Positions 18,237-47,399 of a DNA stretch of 64,000 nucleotides are shown here, in pieces. The stretch lies in NCBI GenBank assembly GCA_964234715.1, contig OZ174275.1. One strand, written 5' to 3'. The first letter of the stretch is position 1. Every line of letters begins with the position of its first letter. The notes beneath the pieces are model-generated. The model was given only the letters and a program-made list of their open reading frames with translations, had not been told where the DNA came from and ran no database searches. The position numbers were made by a program, and so were the translations under genes. Source of the DNA: Podarcis melisellensis. Its lineage: Eukaryota.

Positions 18237-18648
18237 NNNNNNNNNNNNNNNNNNNNNNNNNNNNNNNNNNNNNNNNNNNNNNNNNNNNNNNNNNNNNNNN
18301 NNNNNNNNNNNNNNNNNNNNNNNNNNNNNNNNNNNNNNNNNNNNNNNNNNNNNNNNNNNNNNNNNNNNNNNNNNNNNNNNNNNNNNNNNNNNNNNNNNNN
18401 NNNNNNNNNNNNNNNNNNNNNNNNNNNNNNNNNNNNNNNNNNNNNNNNNNNNNNNNNNNNNNNNNNNNNNNNNNNNNNNNNNNNNNNNNNNNNNNNNNNN
18501 NNNNNNNNNNNNNNNNNNNNNNNNNNNNNNNNNNNNNNNNNNNNNNNNNNNNNNNNNNNNNNNNNNNNNNNNNNNNNNNNNNNNNNNNNNNNNNNNNNNN
18601 NNNNNNNNNNNNNNNNNNNNNNNNNNNNNNNNNNNNNNNNNNNNNNNN
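18237..18648. other. Assembly gap
   Basis: Run of N. Confidence 1.
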
Positions 18649-27043: not shown

Positions 27044-27660
27044 GTAAGTGTACTGAGTGTGGATTGTGCTGCTCAGGGTGCTCAATGGATGGTCAGCCAA
27101 GTTCCTCACAAGTATGTTAGACTCTAAAAACATGGAAACTGCTAAATTCACTGTTGCCCCCACAATTGGCTACAGTTCAGTTTACTTGCAGTCTGCAGAA
27201 GTGATTTAATCCTGAAGTTGGATCGATGAAGGTTTATAACACTTGGTTCCTTTCTGTGAGTCTCTTAGCCATGGAATGGGAGAACAGGAAACAAGCCGAT
27301 ATTCTGTCACTAGTATCTTCCACCAGAAGTCAGGCAATCCCAGAACACAATAGGATCTTATTGGTTTAATGGATTGGGTGTGCCAATAGTACATATCATA
27401 GAGTCTTCATTACCCTAGGAAATAATTTAAACCTTTCTGATATTGCCAGTTTGTGGCCATGATTGAGGTTCCTTATCCAACTTATTAAAGGAAAATGCAG
27501 TTTGGATGAAGATAAAGTGAGAAGTGCATTTGCCGCCACCATCAAACATTGCCTGACAATGACTCAGCTGGGAATCCCATGTTATGTTGTTCGTTCAGTT
27601 TTGAGATGATTCTGCATATCAAACACATGTCGATTCTTTACCCGTGGGCTCTTTTTGCAG

Positions 27661-27976
27661 GAAATATACAAGGATGCGAACACACAGGTTCACACGCTGA
27701 GGAAAATGGTCAAAGAGAAAGAGGAAGCTATTCAACGACAGTCAACGCTGGAGAAGAAGATCCATGAACTGGAGAAGCAAGGGTCCATTAAAATTCAGAA
27801 GAAAGGAGATGGTGATATCAACATTCTTCCTGTTGGGGTGGCTTCTGGGACATTGTCCTCAGGGGCAGAAGCTGCCACCGGCACCTGTGGAGGATCAGCT
27901 TCCGGCTCTGCACCTTCGGTTCTCTTGCCCCCTCCACCACCACCCTTGCCGTTGTCAGAATCAGAATCTGAAGCAG
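27661..27976 (+). CDS. FMNL2: FMNL2 coding exon (coiled coil to start of FH1)
   Basis: ttgcag|GAA...GCAG|gtgaga; [41 protein letters not shown]...[16 protein letters not shown]; phase-1 end matches next exon. Confidence 0.93.
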
Positions 27977-28708
27977 GTGAGAAATGTTGCAGAAGAAATG
28001 AGATTTGCTCAACTTAAGGTAGTGGGGGTTAGCCTATCCCCCACAGTACATCAGGCCATACATGAAAGAGGCTGGGACCCAATCCAGAGAAAGCTGGATG
28101 CAGTGAATCAAGTCACACTTAAGTGTTCACTGGCTATCTAGGCATCTTACCTTAAAAATATTTAATTAGAAATTAATTCCCTCGAAATCAATATGGTCTA
28201 CTCCCAAACTTTATGATTAGACTGTTGTTGAAGTGTGCCAAACTGGCTCTGGATTACACCCTACGTCTTCATCATCATGACAAGTTAGTGAACTTAATAA
28301 TAATAATAAAAAGCAGTGGCAGTAATTGTTATTACTATAAGTAGTAATAGTAGTAATGCTAGTTGTAGTATTAGGTATATGACACAATGCAGAGTAACAT
28401 AAGCATGAAAACAGAGTGATTCCCCTACCCTGAGGAGTTTATCTAATCCTATTCTCAACTTCCATCCTCTTCACTTTTGCTAAACCTGCCATCTTGTGTT
28501 TGAGGTCCATTCTACACACTGCATGATTTGCAAGGGTCTGCAAAATAACATCTATTTGGCAGCTTCTCTATTCTGCAGGCACAATGTATAGCAAAGTTCA
28601 CCATGTGGATTGCCTGTAGTTGAGAGAACTCCCTTGGGGTGTGGGAGGGAGGTGGACATAGTTTGGTTGAATGCTTTAAAATGCTGTTTTGTCTTTTTCA
28701 TTTCTCAG

Positions 28709-28903
28709 TTCAAAATGGTCCTGTGACACCGCCAATGCCTCCTCCCCCTCCCCCGCCTCCTCCCCCTCCTCCCCCACCTCCTCTTCCTGGCCCAGCTGCA
28801 GAACCAGGACTGGCCCCTCCAGTCCCACCCCCACCCCCACCATCAGCGCCTCCTCTTCCAGGAACAGCCTCCCCTACAGTCGTTTTCAACTCAGGATTAG
28901 CAG
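28709..28903 (+). CDS. FMNL2: FMNL2 coding exon (FH1 poly-proline)
   Basis: tctcag|TT...GCAG|gtaaga; (V)[27 protein letters not shown]...[18 protein letters not shown]. Confidence 0.95.
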
Positions 28904-30633
28904 GTAAGAAGCAGACAGTGATGCTGGCATGCCATGGAAGTCCTATACACAATACAAAAAATGTCCTTGGTCAAAGAGGAATGAGTGAGAATGGATGTTA
29001 TGAAAAAGTGCTCCAAAGTCTCCATTGCTTAATGAATCAAGGTGTCCCAGTGCTGCATAACCTTAGCTGCAGCAGTGAATTAAAAGCAAAATAACTTTCT
29101 AAAGCAATGACAAGAGTGATGGCCTATTCTCAGTGAAGGTTTGGGGAGAGGCAATTTTTTTGAAACTAAATCTGTGTGTTGTTTCGCTGCATCTTCTCAA
29201 AGGAGAGATGGTGAGCACCTGATGGAGCCAATACAGAGGTTGAACACATAAGAGATTCCCAGCCCTCCCTCACCATTCTGCAGATTATGAGTAGCTAGCA
29301 TAAAAATGCTTCGATTTTATTAAACGGAGGCTTGATACAGTTGCTACAATCCCTTCATGTTATGTCACTGGTGGTGGAAAAGTGTTAGATGCCTCGTCTC
29401 AAACACTGAATCCAAATCTCCAAATTAGGGCTTCTGAAGATAGGAGGCAGGCATCTCTCAGAAAAGTGTGAGTGGGTTTGCTAAGGAACTGAGTAAGTGA
29501 TTGAATACTCGTTGGTATTTTACACTTTAGGTCATGGAACAATATGATAATTGCAGGCTTAGAAAGCCCAGGTACTCATGCCTAATATATATATATGTTT
29601 AAAAGCAGGTGGCTGGTTCTTTATTTTAAACCTTCTCTGATATCCCTTAAAACAGGCAGAATTTGGATGCCTCTGTGCCATTGAGACATTTATTTGGAAC
29701 AACAGTAGCTTGAAGTAGCCAGGGCTAAAGCACTCAAGTGAATGTGTGTTCCCCCCGCCCCACCTTCCTCTTCCTGCATTGAGTCCAACATCAACAGTTG
29801 CTCATCCTCTGATAGCAGAGGTGAACTTGGAAGATGAGAGATTCAGTTTCTGGTTCTTCAGTGGCATTGCACTGGCTGTGTAGCTCCAGCCTATTCCCCC
29901 TCCCCCTTCAATTTACAACCCTTGGCTTGGTTTTGTCATTAGTCACAACCCTCTATGCAAATCTGATGTTCATTCAGCCTGTTAATACTCTATCTATTGC
30001 CTCACTGCAATTAATACAGTTTCTGTTGACTTGAGCACAATTTGGAAGAATAAAAAAAATCGTGAATCAGGCCGGCCCATTAACATCCCTGGACAAAACT
30101 TCATTAATGAAGAAAGACCCTCAACATAGTTGGAAAACTTAACCCCACGGTTCTGGGTTTGGTCCTGAGGCGGAATCTAGAGTCATTTTTGATGTCTTAT
30201 TGAAAATGACAGCCACTGGGAACTGAAATTAATTCAGAATAGCTGGGTTTTGATCTCCTGCCTGTATATGAAGGGAATATGTTGCAGGGGGGAATCTAAC
30301 AAAATAAAATAAAAAACAGCCTGGCTGGATCATGCCAATGGCCCATGTAGTCCAGCATCCTGTTCTTACAGTGGCCAACCAGATGCCTGTTTGAAGCACA
30401 AAAAAAGAACCTGAATGCCACAGAACTCTCTCCTGTGGTTTCCAGCAACTGGTATTCAGAAGCATACTGCCTCCCACAGTGGAGATAGAACATAGTCCAT
30501 CAGATTAGTAGCCACTGACAGCCTTAGCCTCCCTGAATTTCTCTAGACTTATTTTAAAGGCATCCAAGTTGGTGGCCATCTCTGCTCCTTTTGGGAAACA
30601 TATTGGTGCTTCAGGAAACGAATGCTCCATATA

Positions 30634-30754
30634 CAGTGGTACCGCCGGAGCACCATTTCTGTTCTCATACTGAAGCAACGTTCTTAACCCAAGGTAATAT
30701 TTCTGGGTTAGCAGAGTCTGTAACCTGAATCGTATGTAACCCGAGGTACCACTG
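30634..30754. mobile_element. Tc1/mariner (pogo/Tigger-like) MITE, internally deleted
   Basis: TA|CAGTGGTACC...GGTACCACTG|TA; inverted relative to the 56348 copy. Confidence 0.8.
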
Positions 30755-31255
30755 TATTGGGCTTCAGTAGTTTATTTGTTGGTAAACTAATTCTAGGTTA
30801 TTGGTCTTTATGGCTTTGTTTGCAATCTTCCCATATAAATAAGTTGGGTAAAGTGTAGCTTCCAAATAATACTGTTTATTGCAGAATTAATATGGTACTG
30901 GACCATCCATTAATGGATGCTACCTTTTGTTTGATACTTAAATGAAATCCGTAGAAGGCTTTTGGTGGGCACATGCCTCATCCATTGCTGTTCTGCTACA
31001 CTAAGATAACCTCAAGTAGGAAAATGCAATTTACCTTAATGGGTGATGTTAGGTAAATACCTATTACCATGGGTAGGCTGCCCGGTCCATAAACTCTATA
31101 CGCCTAAGTGCAATTGATTATTTCTATGTAGAAAAATGATAATGTGTGAAGTGGTATTCAGGAGCCCTGATTTGTGATAATAGATTGTTCTATTAAATGA
31201 CCTACATAACCATAGCTAACCTTTTTCTTATTTATTCCCTCTGCTTCCTTGTAAG

Positions 31256-31276
31256 ATGGGCCAATCAAGCTTTTCT
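31256..31276 (+). CDS. FMNL2: Candidate 21-nt alternative microexon of FMNL2 between FH1 and FH2
   Basis: Branch-like GCTAAC 31215-31220, long pyrimidine tract with TGC at 31242, gtaag|ATGGGCCAATCAAGCTTTTCT|gtaggt; phase 1-1 and in frame: GLA-DGPIKLFS-VKIKK. Confidence 0.75.
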
Positions 31277-33239
31277 GTAGGTTCCTTTTTGCTGAGTATT
31301 TTAAGTACATTTTAATCCCATTTTCTGCTGTCTTCTTTTCCTGTCTTGTTAACCAAATCCATTTGTGTATCACTTTAAAAACTAGCTCGCTGTGTTGTTG
31401 CATTCTCCGAAAGCATGGGATGTTTGTTTGACTTGTTGTGGTGCAAAAGCTCTTTTTAGGAGAAAAGGGGTTTCCTAACAACTCTCCGCACCCTTAACAA
31501 GCTATACTTCTTAAGATTGATTGGGGGAAGCCATGACTGTTTAAAGTTGTATCATTGCTGTTTTCTATGTGTGGTGTGTATGTGGCCTTGGTTTTTCCAT
31601 AAAATAGAAACTCTAGGGTATTCTAAGGCACATCATTGCATGCAGCATTGCATCTTATGTTAGAGACTCATCAAGATCAATCACTTGGCTACCTTCAAAC
31701 AGAAATATTCTTAATATACCTTCCCTTCGTGATGTCACCGCACATCCAAACAAGTGCATCTTTTAAGCAAATGAGAAGTAGCTTCAGACCTTTGAGTGGA
31801 TAGTGACATCATCACATAATATCGGGCTCACTGCCTATCAAATTGTAATTTGCAGCTCCAGTTTTGACAGCTGACAAAAGATGTGTGGAAATTTGCTTAA
31901 AATTAGTGGATGAATTTGTGGAATCTATTACAAATGTATCCCCAGTCTGAAACTTTGCACAAGGGTTTTGGTGCATTATAGGGGAAAGAGGGGGGGGGGG
32001 AAAGGATAGATAACAAGATATTTGGGGTGTACACATTCCCAGTCATCATACGTGAACAATAGTGTCCTTTGGGAATGTGAGTTTGCCTGTGGTAAAATTC
32101 ACTAGGTATGCTTTGCTTGACGGTGGACATAACAACTGCATGTTTCCAACTTCACTTTCCTGGCTAAGTAGCTTCTTCAAAACTGGAGGAGTAAGAAGCA
32201 GGGGTTTCTTGACTGTGTGAAGCTTGCAGAAATGTTAACAATTCACTAATTTAGTTTTAAATTCATGCTGTCAAATTGATAAACTGCTTGTCCCACTAAA
32301 TAATAATACACATTGTGGCAAAATAAGCTAGGATTTTCTCTGGCAATACTTGATACTACCATTGTAGCACAGGATTTTATCTACTGTTGCAAAGCACTGT
32401 GCATTGGAATCTGCACTGTGTGTGTGTCCAGTTTCAAACTGGACTTGGTCCTTAATGACATGAAGGTGAGGAAGGAGCTGGTTGAGTTGATTAATTAACC
32501 AAATTGCTTAAAGCTTCAGAACCAATTTAAAACTTCTGCCGCAATTGATGTTTTCAGTGGCAAATGTTCTCTAGAATGTCATTTCCTGAATTTTATGTGC
32601 ATGTCCTCTGAACTTCATGAAGATTAATGCTTACAGTGAATGAGTTACTAATTGCTGGATATTTCCAGCGATGGACATTTAATCAGTCCCCTTGGCTCTT
32701 AGGGTTAGGAAGTTTCTCCACCCCTTAGTAATTAACCTAAATTTTCCTGCTTCAGCTTATTATTCTTTGTCCACCGGTTAATGGGGAAGGCATGTCTTCA
32801 GAGCTGCTTTGGAAAATGTAGTAGACAATCACAATGAGAGATGGTCCAAGAAACAAATAATCCAAGAAATGATTGTGCCGAGACTGAAGAGTGTTCTTTT
32901 ACTGTTTAAAGCAAGCACAGACTCTGGATTCTTTAAATTGCAGCGTAATTTCCCTGGTGGCTGCTGTCAATTCCAATTGCTTATATTCAGCTTAGAGCTT
33001 CTCTTCTTGCATTTCCAAAACACCACTTGCTTGTTTAGGATTGAGGGCTCATCTACCCTTGCCTTTTGCCCTGCACTTTCTAGGCATTTTCCTGGTCTGT
33101 GACTGAGTGCTTCCCCCCACCCTTGCCGCTTTCCTCAGGAAAACCCAATCTTTACTGCTGAATTGGAGCAAGCGGCTATTAGGGTTTTCCATGAAATTGT
33201 TTTCAGTGGTAAAGAATGGGAGTTTGTGGAGGAAGGACC

Positions 33240-33298
33240 AGGAAGGAAGGAAGGAAGGAAGGAAGGAAGGAAGGAAGGAAGGAAGGAAGGAAGGAAGG
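33240..33298. repeat. (GGAA)n microsatellite
   Basis: About 14 units by direct inspection. Confidence 0.95.
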
Positions 33299-35052: not shown

Positions 35053-35177
35053 CTGTGAAAATCAAGAAGCCAATTAAGACAAAGTTCCGCATGCCAGTTT
35101 TTAACTGGGTGGCTCTGAAACCCAATCAGATTAACGGGACAGTCTTCAATGAAATTGATGACGAAAGGATATTGGAG
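35053..35177 (+). CDS. FMNL2: FMNL2 coding exon (start of FH2)
   Basis: ttaaag|CT...GAG|gtatga; (A)[41 protein letters not shown]. Confidence 0.96.
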
Positions 35178-35209: not shown

Positions 35210-35274
<65 letters not shown>

Positions 35275-35291
35275 CTGTCTGTCTGTCTGTG
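35210..35291. repeat. Compound (CT)n(GT)n(CTGT)n microsatellite
   Basis: Direct inspection; starts about 33 nt after an FH2 exon donor. Confidence 0.95.
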
Positions 35292-41194: not shown

Positions 41195-41323
41195 NNNNNN
41201 NNNNNNNNNNNNNNNNNNNNNNNNNNNNNNNNNNNNNNNNNNNNNNNNNNNNNNNNNNNNNNNNNNNNNNNNNNNNNNNNNNNNNNNNNNNNNNNNNNNN
41301 NNNNNNNNNNNNNNNNNNNNNNN
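41195..41323. other. Assembly gap
   Basis: Run of N. Confidence 1.
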
Positions 41324-45703: not shown

Positions 45704-45933
45704 ACTTTTCCTCTTTCACACCCGACGCTCTTTAAAAAAAAACAAAAAGGTTGCTGTAGGTTTTTGACGTTTCTCCGCATTATAGCTGTTTGAATGGATT
45801 AGTGATGTTTGGCATCTCGTTGGAGTCATATTTGACATCGCTCATCTCATTGCATGTTTTTGCCTGCCAGGAACCTTTTTTTGGTTCCCTTCCATCCTCC
45901 CAGTGACCGTTTGTTCTACCTTCCGCATTTCAG

Positions 45934-46145
45934 AGTCACCCTGTGGGCTCAGCCCCATAGAGCAGCAAGTGATGGAAGTCACAGAAATGTCCTCAAGGCC
46001 CATGGCGGCTGCGCTTCAAGCCAGCCACCACAATTTGCAAGGGATGGTTGTGGGTTGTAATGGCAAATGTGATGGACAGTTCACTTGGCTTTTCTGTGTC
46101 TTCTCCTCTGGGCTCTCGCACCTCCTTTACTTCTTTGTGACTTGA
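45934..46145 (+). CDS. FMNL2: Candidate third FMNL2 C-terminal exon (70 aa, ESPC...YFFVT*)
   Basis: Acceptor ttctaccttccgcatttcag|AG with upstream GTGAC; the phase-1 frame is the open frame of ORF 45903..46145. Confidence 0.4.
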
Positions 46146-47227: not shown

Positions 47228-47399
47228 NNNNNNNNNNNNNNNNNNNNNNNNNNNNNNNNNNNNNNNNNNNNNNNNNNNNNNNNNNNNNNNNNNNNNNNNN
47301 NNNNNNNNNNNNNNNNNNNNNNNNNNNNNNNNNNNNNNNNNNNNNNNNNNNNNNNNNNNNNNNNNNNNNNNNNNNNNNNNNNNNNNNNNNNNNNNNNNN
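47228..47399. other. Assembly gap
   Basis: Run of N. Confidence 1.

What the first reader, a model, noticed from the sequence alone, without database searches (positions are those of the whole stretch)
31210..31285. Hidden 21-nt microexon at the FH1-FH2 junction of FMNL2 with an SRRM4-type signature
Seen: deep in a 6.1-kb intron there is a branch-like GCTAAC (31215-31220), a ~30-nt pyrimidine tract containing TGC 12-14 nt before the exon, then AG|ATGGGCCAATCAAGCTTTTCT|GTAGGT. It is phase 1-1, a multiple of 3 and stop-free, changing GLA-A-VKIKK to GLA-DGPIKLFS-VKIKK. RBFOX TGCATG sites lie downstream (31637, 32137). Established: UGC near the 3' splice site is the SRRM3/SRRM4 motif of neural microexons, and FH1-FH2 spacing affects profilin-actin delivery in formins. 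Inference: a tissue-specific (probably neural) switch that tunes actin elongation. It is too short for the ORF track and is easily missed by annotation pipelines.
Basis: partly seen in the sequence, partly recalled or inferred. Interest (0 to 1): 0.75.

Follow-up and report, generated by a model that had tools for sequence, protein, structure and literature searches.

The report
Conserved FMNL2 microexon, already known
The 21-base stretch is a genuine, very old alternative mini-exon of the actin regulator FMNL2, kept almost letter for letter from sharks to mammals. It is already annotated in many other vertebrates and is probably the neural FMNL2 microexon listed in the literature, so it is a correct catch but not a new one.

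Summary
Motifs alone prove nothing: under a crude splice-site score, 44% of shuffled introns contain an equally good candidate.

Comparison with other species settles it. The same 21 bases with the same AG/GT borders lie in the orthologous FMNL2 intron of a gecko and a rodent (21/21 identical), a seabird (19/21, both changes synonymous) and a bony-tongue fish (only D>E). The surrounding intron is otherwise unalignable. The insertion GLA-(D/E)GP(I/L)KLFS-VKIKK appears in annotated FMNL2 isoforms of sea turtles, birds, frogs, many teleosts and a shark, and GPIKLFS-VKIKK in a Mus caroli model. Sea turtles carry isoforms both with and without it.

The UGC at -14..-12, the weak AAG acceptor and the GTAGGTT donor are conserved. 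The RBFOX sites are not.

Polinski et al. 2025 list a neural-specific, frame-preserving FMNL2 microexon "right next to the FH2 domain". Here Pfam FH2 starts 4 residues after the insert, so it is very probably the same exon.

The window is from a lacertid lizard close to Podarcis muralis, and none of the five Ensembl Podarcis models seen here includes the exon. RNA evidence for this species could not be obtained. Neural use, SRRM3/4 dependence and any effect on actin elongation are inferred, not shown.

Verdict: real, correctly interpreted, already known, low novelty.

The parts
28709..28903 (+). FH1 (polyproline) exon of FMNL2, 195 nt, phase 1-1. It ends ...VVFNSGLA + G, with donor GCAG|GTAAGA.
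   Evidence: The protein matches Podarcis muralis FMNL2. The same exon end is found in four other species.
31215..31220 (+). Branch-point-like GCTAAC, with CTAAC 40 nt upstream of the exon.
   Evidence: CTAAC lies at -40 in the gecko and -38 in the bird. No CTAAC at that offset in the rodent (only CTAAT at -55) or the fish.
31221..31250 (+). Polypyrimidine tract (90% C/T) containing the conserved block TCTGCTTCC.
31242..31244 (+). UGC motif at -14..-12 from the exon, the SRRM3/4-type intronic enhancer position.
   Evidence: T of TGC at -14 in lizard, gecko, bird and rodent, and at -11 in the fish.
31254..31255 (+). 3' splice-site AG in a weak AAG context.
   Evidence: AAG| is invariant in all five species.
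31256..31276 (+). 21-nt microexon ATGGGCCAATCAAGCTTTTCT, phase 1-1. It encodes (G)AT-GGG-CCA-ATC-AAG-CTT-TTC-T(CT), i.e. DGPIKLFS in place of A.
   Evidence: It is 21/21 identical in Gekko kuhli and Neotoma lepida, 19/21 (synonymous changes) in Oceanites, and gives EGPIKLFS in Scleropages. It is annotated in 34 FMNL2 protein clusters.
31277..31283 (+). 5' splice site GTAGGTT, following TCT.
   Evidence: invariant in all five species.
35053..35177 (+). First FH2 exon, 125 nt, encoding (A/S)[41 protein letters not shown].
   Evidence: Pfam FH2 starts 4 residues after the insert in the turtle isoform P0298.

Best explanation
This is the lizard ortholog of an ancient alternative coding microexon of FMNL2. 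The exon is 21 nt and phase 1-1. It lies between the last FH1 exon and the first FH2 exon.

Inclusion replaces one alanine with eight residues (DGPIKLFS), a net gain of 7 residues. The insert ends 4 residues before the Pfam FH2 domain begins.

Shown here:
- The exon, its AG/GT borders, the upstream UGC-containing pyrimidine block and the GTAGGTT donor are under strong purifying selection across bony vertebrates, and the peptide is kept in a shark.
- The exon is used in annotated mRNA and protein isoforms of other species, alongside skipping isoforms.

Inferred:
- In this lizard it is likewise alternatively included, mainly in neurons (about 0.7).
- Inclusion works through SRRM3/SRRM4 recognising the UGC element next to a weak AAG acceptor.
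- The insert lengthens or alters the tether between the last profilin-binding polyproline track and the FH2 lasso, so it modulates FMNL2-driven filament elongation or partner binding.
For: - Sequence and frame are as described.
- The 21-mer with identical borders lies in the orthologous intron of four other species. It is 21/21 in gecko and rodent and 19/21 (synonymous) in a bird. In a fish all changes are at third codon positions: four are synonymous and one gives D>E.
- It is the only conserved island in the intron. The longest exact word shared with the gecko is 47 nt, against 16 for the next longest. With the rodent it is 31 nt against 15.
- 34 FMNL2 protein clusters from Mus caroli, birds, turtles, frogs, teleosts (fmnl2a and fmnl2b) and a shark carry a (D/E)GP(I/L)KLFS-type insert (one cluster EGALKLFS; Y in place of D in Mus caroli) directly before VKIKKPI(K/Q)T.
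- RefSeq sea-turtle isoform sets contain both forms, differing by exactly these residues.
- The UGC is at -14..-12 in all four amniotes, and AAG| and |GTAGGTT are invariant.
- Pfam FH2 starts at residue 652 of P0298 and the insert occupies 641-648.
- PMC12056172 lists a neural-specific, frame-preserving FMNL2 microexon 'right next to' the FH2 domain, taken from Irimia et al. 2014 and VastDB.
- No other frame-preserving microexon adjoins FH2 among the turtle isoforms.
Against: - There is no transcript evidence from this species. The four candidate RNA runs were Logan contigs with zero depth on the flanking exons, and only unspliced contigs crossed the site.
- The paper gives no coordinates or sequence for 'FMNL2-A' in its held text, so identity with this exon rests on position and type only.
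- The same paper says the DAAM1 microexon has higher neural specificity and conservation than the other formin alternative exons. That comparison would allow the FMNL2 exon to be less strictly neural.
- None of the five Ensembl Podarcis muralis FMNL2 models includes the exon.
- By my crude matrix the splice sites are weak.
Confidence: 0.85

Rival explanations
1. Chance match. An AG...GT pair enclosing an in-frame, stop-free 21-mer arose at random in a long intron and is never spliced in.
For:: the intron holds 216 in-frame stop-free candidates, and 44% of shuffled introns hold one at least as good under a crude matrix. The donor (TCT|GTAGGT) and acceptor (AAG|) are weak.
Against: The 21-mer and both splice sites are conserved from fish to rodent in otherwise unalignable introns. 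The changes follow a coding pattern. The insertion is annotated in many vertebrates.
Confidence: 0.01
2. It is a conserved intronic regulatory element, such as a decoy or recursive splice site or a splicing silencer/enhancer. It is kept for RNA-level reasons and does not contribute protein in lizards.
For: Nucleotide identity among amniotes (21/21) is higher than protein coding alone requires. There is no lizard transcript evidence and the exon is absent from the Podarcis Ensembl models.
Against: In the bird and the fish, changes fall on third codon positions and the peptide is kept. Isoforms of sauropsids (turtles, birds) and other vertebrates include it in frame. Extra nucleotide constraint is usual for microexons, which carry splicing signals inside the exon.
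Confidence: 0.03
3. It is a real alternative exon, but in sauropsids it is not neuron-restricted or not SRRM3/4-driven. It might be broadly included at low level, or used in muscle or endocrine cells and controlled by other factors such as RBFOX or PTBP.
For: PMC12056172 speaks of 'different degrees' of neural specificity among the formin exons, and says the DAAM1 exon has higher neural specificity than the other formin alternative exons. All six TGCATG sites of the intron lie downstream of the exon. No tissue data were obtained here.
Against: The UGC is conserved at the canonical distance in front of a weak acceptor. The literature lists the exon as neural-regulated. TGCATG is not enriched in the intron (6 observed against 3.2 expected, P=0.12) and is not conserved in position in gecko, bird, rodent or fish.
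Confidence: 0.15

Closest known systems
FMNL2-A, the neural-regulated frame-preserving FMNL2 microexon of Polinski et al. 2025 (PMC12056172; source list Irimia et al. 2014, VastDB)
   Same: Same gene. It is a microexon and frame-preserving. It lies directly next to the FH2 domain: the insert ends 4 residues before the Pfam FH2 start. It is conserved across vertebrates.
   Different: The paper's held text gives no sequence, length or coordinates, so identity is inferred. Its data are mammalian and VastDB species, not lizards.
RefSeq/Gnomon FMNL2 isoforms carrying GLA-DGPIKLFS-VKIKK, e.g. Chelonia mydas X5 (XP_043381575.1), Caretta caretta X1 and X2, Lepidochelys kempii X1, Engystomops pustulosus X4; Chiloscyllium plagiosum X3 carries GLA-EGPIKLFS-VKIKK
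   Same: The inserted peptide in the turtle and frog isoforms is identical to the translation of window 31256-31276; the shark has E in place of D. The flanking exons are the same. Skipping isoforms exist alongside.
   Different: These are other species. The five lacertid Ensembl models seen here lack it.
Daam1-MIC, the SRRM3/4-dependent neuronal microexon in the FH2 linker of DAAM1 (PMC12056172)
   Same: Both are short, frame-preserving, deeply conserved microexons in a Diaphanous-related formin that change the length of a flexible segment tied to FH2 function.
   Different: It is a different gene and position: inside the FH2 linker rather than just before FH2. Its function has been shown experimentally, whereas the FMNL2 exon has not been studied functionally as far as the searched papers show.

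Membership tests
Vertebrate FMNL2 FH1-FH2 junction microexon (ortholog group) | Lies in the intron between the exon ending ...FNSGLA(G) and the exon starting (CT)GTG AAA ATC AAG = VKIKKPIK | tested here: met
   the same flanking exon ends are found in gecko, bird, rodent and fish loci.
Vertebrate FMNL2 FH1-FH2 junction microexon (ortholog group) | 21 nt, phase 1-1, encoding (D/E)GP(I/L)KLFS | tested here: met
   One search gives DGPIKLFS. One search shows the same type of peptide in 34 annotated FMNL2 clusters.
Vertebrate FMNL2 FH1-FH2 junction microexon (ortholog group) | Orthologous splice-site flanks (TCTGCTTCC...AAG| and |GTAGGTT) | tested here: met
Vertebrate FMNL2 FH1-FH2 junction microexon (ortholog group) | Actually spliced into mRNA in this species | tested here: inconclusive
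   the flanking exons had zero depth in all four contig sets, because a filter hides conserved exons. Only unspliced contigs crossed the site.
FMNL2-A of Polinski et al. 2025 | Frame-preserving microexon right next to the FH2 domain of FMNL2 | tested here: met
   FH2 starts at residue 652 and the insert occupies 641-648 of P0298; no other frame-preserving microexon adjoins FH2 in the turtle isoform sets.
SRRM3/SRRM4-dependent neural microexons | Length 3-27 nt and a multiple of 3 | tested here: met
   21 nt.
SRRM3/SRRM4-dependent neural microexons | UGC-containing element between the polypyrimidine tract and the 3' splice site, close to the exon | tested here: met
   TGC at -14..-12 in four amniotes and at -11..-9 in the fish.
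SRRM3/SRRM4-dependent neural microexons | High conservation of the exon and its immediate intronic flanks | tested here: met
SRRM3/SRRM4-dependent neural microexons | Neural-restricted inclusion | not testable with these tools
   No usable RNA reads for this species. Neural regulation is stated for the FMNL2 microexon from mouse and/or human lists in PMC12056172.
SRRM3/SRRM4-dependent neural microexons | Inclusion depends on SRRM3/4 | not testable with these tools
   Needs perturbation data. The paper shows it for DAAM1 but the held text does not state it for FMNL2-A.
RBFOX-activated exons | Conserved (U)GCAUG within about 300 nt downstream of the exon | tested here: not met
   The nearest TGCATG is at +361 and is lizard-only. 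GCATG lies at +137 (lizard) and +128 (gecko) only. Rodent and bird have none within 500 nt. The intron count is 6 against 3.2 expected (P=0.12).

The most novel reading that the evidence does not exclude
The insert is more than a 7-residue spacer. The peptide (D/E)GP(I/L)KLFS is essentially invariant from shark to mammal. It may therefore act as a sequence-specific short linear motif placed just before the FH2 lasso. It could change the hand-off of profilin-actin from the last polyproline track, or recruit a partner in neurons. No functional study of this FMNL2 exon turned up in the searched literature.
Probability: 0.35. Interest if true: 0.45.

Novelty: already known. Interest (0 to 1): 0.2.

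Why it matters
For this genome it is an annotation fix: the lacertid FMNL2 models seen here omit a deeply conserved coding exon. More broadly, the exon belongs to the conserved vertebrate microexon programme in cytoskeletal genes. A comparable microexon in the formin DAAM1 affects actin dynamics and memory in mice. The FMNL2 exon sits at the FH1-FH2 hinge and remains functionally untested, so it is a reasonable target for follow-up. Its existence and conservation are not news.

Tried and rejected
- **Motif-only significance.** I kept this as a caveat, not as evidence.
- **RNA evidence.** Only Logan contigs of guessed-RNA runs from related organisms were offered. Laid on 27600-33200, they gave zero depth on both known exons. 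The tool itself warns that a filter removes conserved, human-like records. Only unspliced low-depth contigs crossed the microexon, so there are no joints at 31256 or 31276 and no conclusion either way.
- **Papers.** Irimia 2014 (PMC4390143) is not held. The supplements of PMC12056172 are not held. A full-text search for the peptide found nothing. Searches combining FMNL2 with SRRM4 or splicing terms gave no functional study of this exon.
- **First protein search.** It used a 605-aa query, so only proteins up to 1059 aa were seen, and it found no insertion. That was a length artefact. Longer queries found the insertion.
- **RBFOX hypothesis.** Rejected as unsupported.
- **Rfam scan of 30100-31600.** Nothing found.
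- **Joined spliced model.** Searches used one exon by reference (window:35055-35177) or database protein ids. The three-exon junction was joined only as a 48-nt local translation in a script.
- **Human material.** No contig taken for human was fetched or compared. The loci used are Neotoma lepida, Oceanites oceanicus, Scleropages formosus and Gekko kuhli.

Full report
**1. Observation**

- GCTAAC lies at 31215-31220.
- A 30-nt tract at 31221-31250 is 90% pyrimidine and contains TGC at 31242-31244, which is -14..-12 from the exon.
- The exon reads AG|ATGGGCCAATCAAGCTTTTCT|GTAGGT, at 31256-31276.
- The upstream FH1 exon runs 28709-28903 and ends GCAG|GTAAGA. The downstream exon runs 35053-35177. 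The intron between them is 6,149 nt.
- The candidate is phase 1-1 and stop-free. Skipping reads GLA-A-VKIKK and inclusion reads GLA-DGPIKLFS-VKIKK.
- TGCATG occurs at 31637 and 32137.

**2. Is it more than chance on motifs alone? No.**

Under that score, 44% of Markov-shuffled introns contained a candidate at least as good on both sites. The acceptor (AAG|) and the donor (TCT|GTAGGT) are weak. The sequence signals by themselves therefore prove nothing.

**3. What organism and gene**

The exons in the window translate to FMNL2. Over the 52-residue variable stretch before FH1 shown, the protein differs by one residue from Podarcis muralis FMNL2 (P0230). The window is therefore from a lacertid lizard.

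**4. Conservation at the DNA level**

I fetched the orthologous intron from four other species through partial gene models:
- Neotoma lepida (rodent, L001)
- Oceanites oceanicus (bird, L002)
- Scleropages formosus (teleost, L003)
- Gekko kuhli (L004)

In each locus, one 21-mer with the same AG/GT borders lies between the exon ending ...FNSGLA and the exon starting VKIKKPIK.
- Gecko and rodent are 21/21 identical to the lizard.
- The bird is 19/21, and both changes are synonymous (GAT>GAC, CTT>CTC).
- The fish differs only at third codon positions: four changes are synonymous and one turns D into E.

The five-way alignment shows three features invariant in all five species: AAG before the exon, TTCT|GTAGGTT at the donor, and most of the exon. 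The block TCTGCTTCC is conserved in all four amniotes.

The rest of the intron is essentially unalignable. The longest exact word shared by the lizard and gecko introns is 47 nt across the microexon, against 16 nt for the next longest. For lizard and rodent the figures are 31 nt against 15 nt, and that 15-mer is a TA repeat (pairwise alignment). This is the signature of a coding exon with constrained splice signals, not of a chance match.

**5. Use in annotated transcripts elsewhere**

The first protein search used a 605-aa query. It could therefore see only proteins up to 1059 aa, and it showed no insertion. Longer queries did show it. In total, 34 FMNL2 protein clusters carry a (D/E)GP(I/L)KLFS-type insert directly before VKIKKPI(K/Q)T; one cluster reads EGALKLFS.
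- Mus caroli (here Y replaces D, because a different upstream exon ending in T is spliced on)
- Corvus and Cyanistes
- sea turtles
- the frogs Engystomops and Pelodytes
- many teleosts, in both the KIKKPIK and KIKKPIQ forms, some of which sources name fmnl2a or fmnl2b
- the shark Chiloscyllium plagiosum

A Columba guinea model contains DGPIKLF followed by read-through into the intron.

Within one 90% cluster of RefSeq sea-turtle isoforms, both forms exist and differ by exactly A versus DGPIKLFS. This is what an alternative cassette exon looks like in annotation. The five Ensembl models of Podarcis muralis all lack the exon, and several also skip or mis-join the FH1 exon. "Hidden" is therefore fair for the lacertid models seen here, but not for vertebrates in general.

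**6. Relation to the literature**

Polinski et al. 2025 (PMC12056172) surveyed neural-regulated exons in the 15 mammalian formins, using Irimia et al. 2014 Table S2 and VastDB. They list three frame-preserving microexons: DAAM1, FMNL1-A and FMNL2-A. They place FMNL2-A "right next to" the FH2 domain and report its conservation across vertebrates in a figure.

In the turtle isoform P0298 the insert occupies residues 641-648, and Pfam FH2 starts at 652. Among the turtle isoforms, the other alternative events are a 40-aa insertion near the GBD/FH3 region, one intron-retention-like insert before FH1, and alternative C-termini. None of these is a frame-preserving microexon adjoining FH2. FMNL2-A is therefore very probably this exon.

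The held text gives no coordinates. The supplements and Irimia 2014 are not held. The identification is therefore strong but indirect. I found no functional study of this exon.

**7. Mechanism**

Shown:
- The exon has a weak AAG acceptor.
- A UGC lies at -14..-12 in all four amniotes and at -11..-9 in the fish.
- CTAAC lies at about -40 in squamates and -38 in the bird.
- The donor is invariant.

From established knowledge: SRRM4/nSR100 and SRRM3 promote inclusion of very short exons through UGC-containing elements placed between the polypyrimidine tract and the 3' splice site (Raj et al. 2014 and Irimia et al. 2014, cited from my own knowledge and in PMC12056172).

Inferred: the lizard exon is included mainly in neurons through this route. 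I put that at about 0.7, because the paper says the DAAM1 exon has higher neural specificity than the other formin alternative exons, which would allow the FMNL2 exon to be less strictly neural.

The RBFOX part of the finding is not supported.
- The intron has 6 TGCATG against 3.2 expected (P=0.12).
- The sites are not conserved in position in gecko, bird, rodent or fish.
- Rodent and bird have none within 500 nt downstream of the exon.
- All six lizard sites do lie downstream of the exon, which is suggestive, but I noticed that only after the fact.

At the protein level, the insert adds 7 residues between the last polyproline track ([11 protein letters not shown]...) and the FH2 lasso. That this tunes profilin-actin transfer is inference from general FH1 models. 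The invariance of the peptide from shark to mammal suggests a sequence-specific role rather than a pure spacer, and this is untested.

**8. RNA evidence in this species was not obtainable**

The run search offered only Logan contigs of guessed-RNA runs from related organisms. I laid them on 27600-33200. All four runs had zero depth on the two known exons. The tool warns that conserved, human-like records are filtered out and that a hole proves nothing. Low-depth unspliced contigs crossed the microexon, for example 31177-31638 and 31093-31569, with about 2-3% differences from the window. No joint appeared at 31256 or 31276. This neither supports nor refutes splicing.

**9. Procedure notes**

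Searches used the single exon window:35055-35177 by reference or database protein ids. The three-exon junction was only translated locally, as 48 nt, in a script. No contig taken for human was fetched. N runs were left untouched.

**10. Verdict**

This is a genuine alternative coding microexon of FMNL2 at the FH1-FH2 junction, conserved across jawed vertebrates and carrying an SRRM3/4-type signature. It is already annotated in many vertebrates and is very probably the neural microexon listed in the literature. Novelty is low: the finding is an annotation gap for lacertids. Tissue specificity in lizards and the effect on actin assembly remain to be tested.

Noticed in passing
window 30220-30760: A stretch of the intron is covered at enormous summed depth (up to about 1e5) by hundreds of short contigs, with many rearranged joints, in all four runs. 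It behaves like a highly repeated, expressed interspersed element (SINE or other transposon). Rfam found no family over 30100-31600.
   Followed up: partly
window 35210-35290 and 33230-33298: A (TC)27 / (TCTG)n microsatellite starts 33 nt after the donor of the first FH2 exon. An (AGGA)17 repeat lies in the intron downstream of the microexon.
   Followed up: no
Podarcis muralis Ensembl FMNL2 models P0230, P0377-P0380: All five models lack the microexon. Three skip the whole FH1 exon (SESESEA-A-VKIKK). P0230 has an odd junction (ASPTV-KPIKTKF) that drops VFNSGLA and VKIK. P0377 shows no VKIKKPIK-type motif at all. These look like annotation errors around the GC-rich FH1 exon.
   Followed up: partly
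Mus caroli FMNL2 model P0288 (XP_029340711.1); primers in PMC12881438: The mouse model splices an extra upstream exon ending ...ELLDSE+T onto the microexon, giving Y-GPIKLFS. A mouse RT-qPCR primer in a sarcopenia paper (GAGTCTGAAT|CTGTGAAAAT) appears, by inference from this model, to join that extra exon directly to the first FH2 exon. Rodents therefore seem to have a further alternative exon in this intron.
   Followed up: no
sea-turtle FMNL2 isoforms P0370, P0376 and others: Other alternative events in sauropsid FMNL2 are a 40-aa insert near the GBD/FH3 region, a 22-aa intron-retention-like insert before FH1, and at least four alternative C-termini. The C-termini may bear on the separate note about 45901-46145 in this window (s1-501950).
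   Followed up: no
Neotoma lepida model P0032 (L001): The model skips the FH1 exon and reads 12 nt into the preceding intron, giving ...PEAGKMAS-VKIKK. This is a spurious mini-extension, not the microexon. The real microexon lies unannotated at L001 13296-13316.
   Followed up: yes
window 18237-18648, 41195-41323, 47228-47399: Three runs of N (713 bases in all).
   Followed up: no
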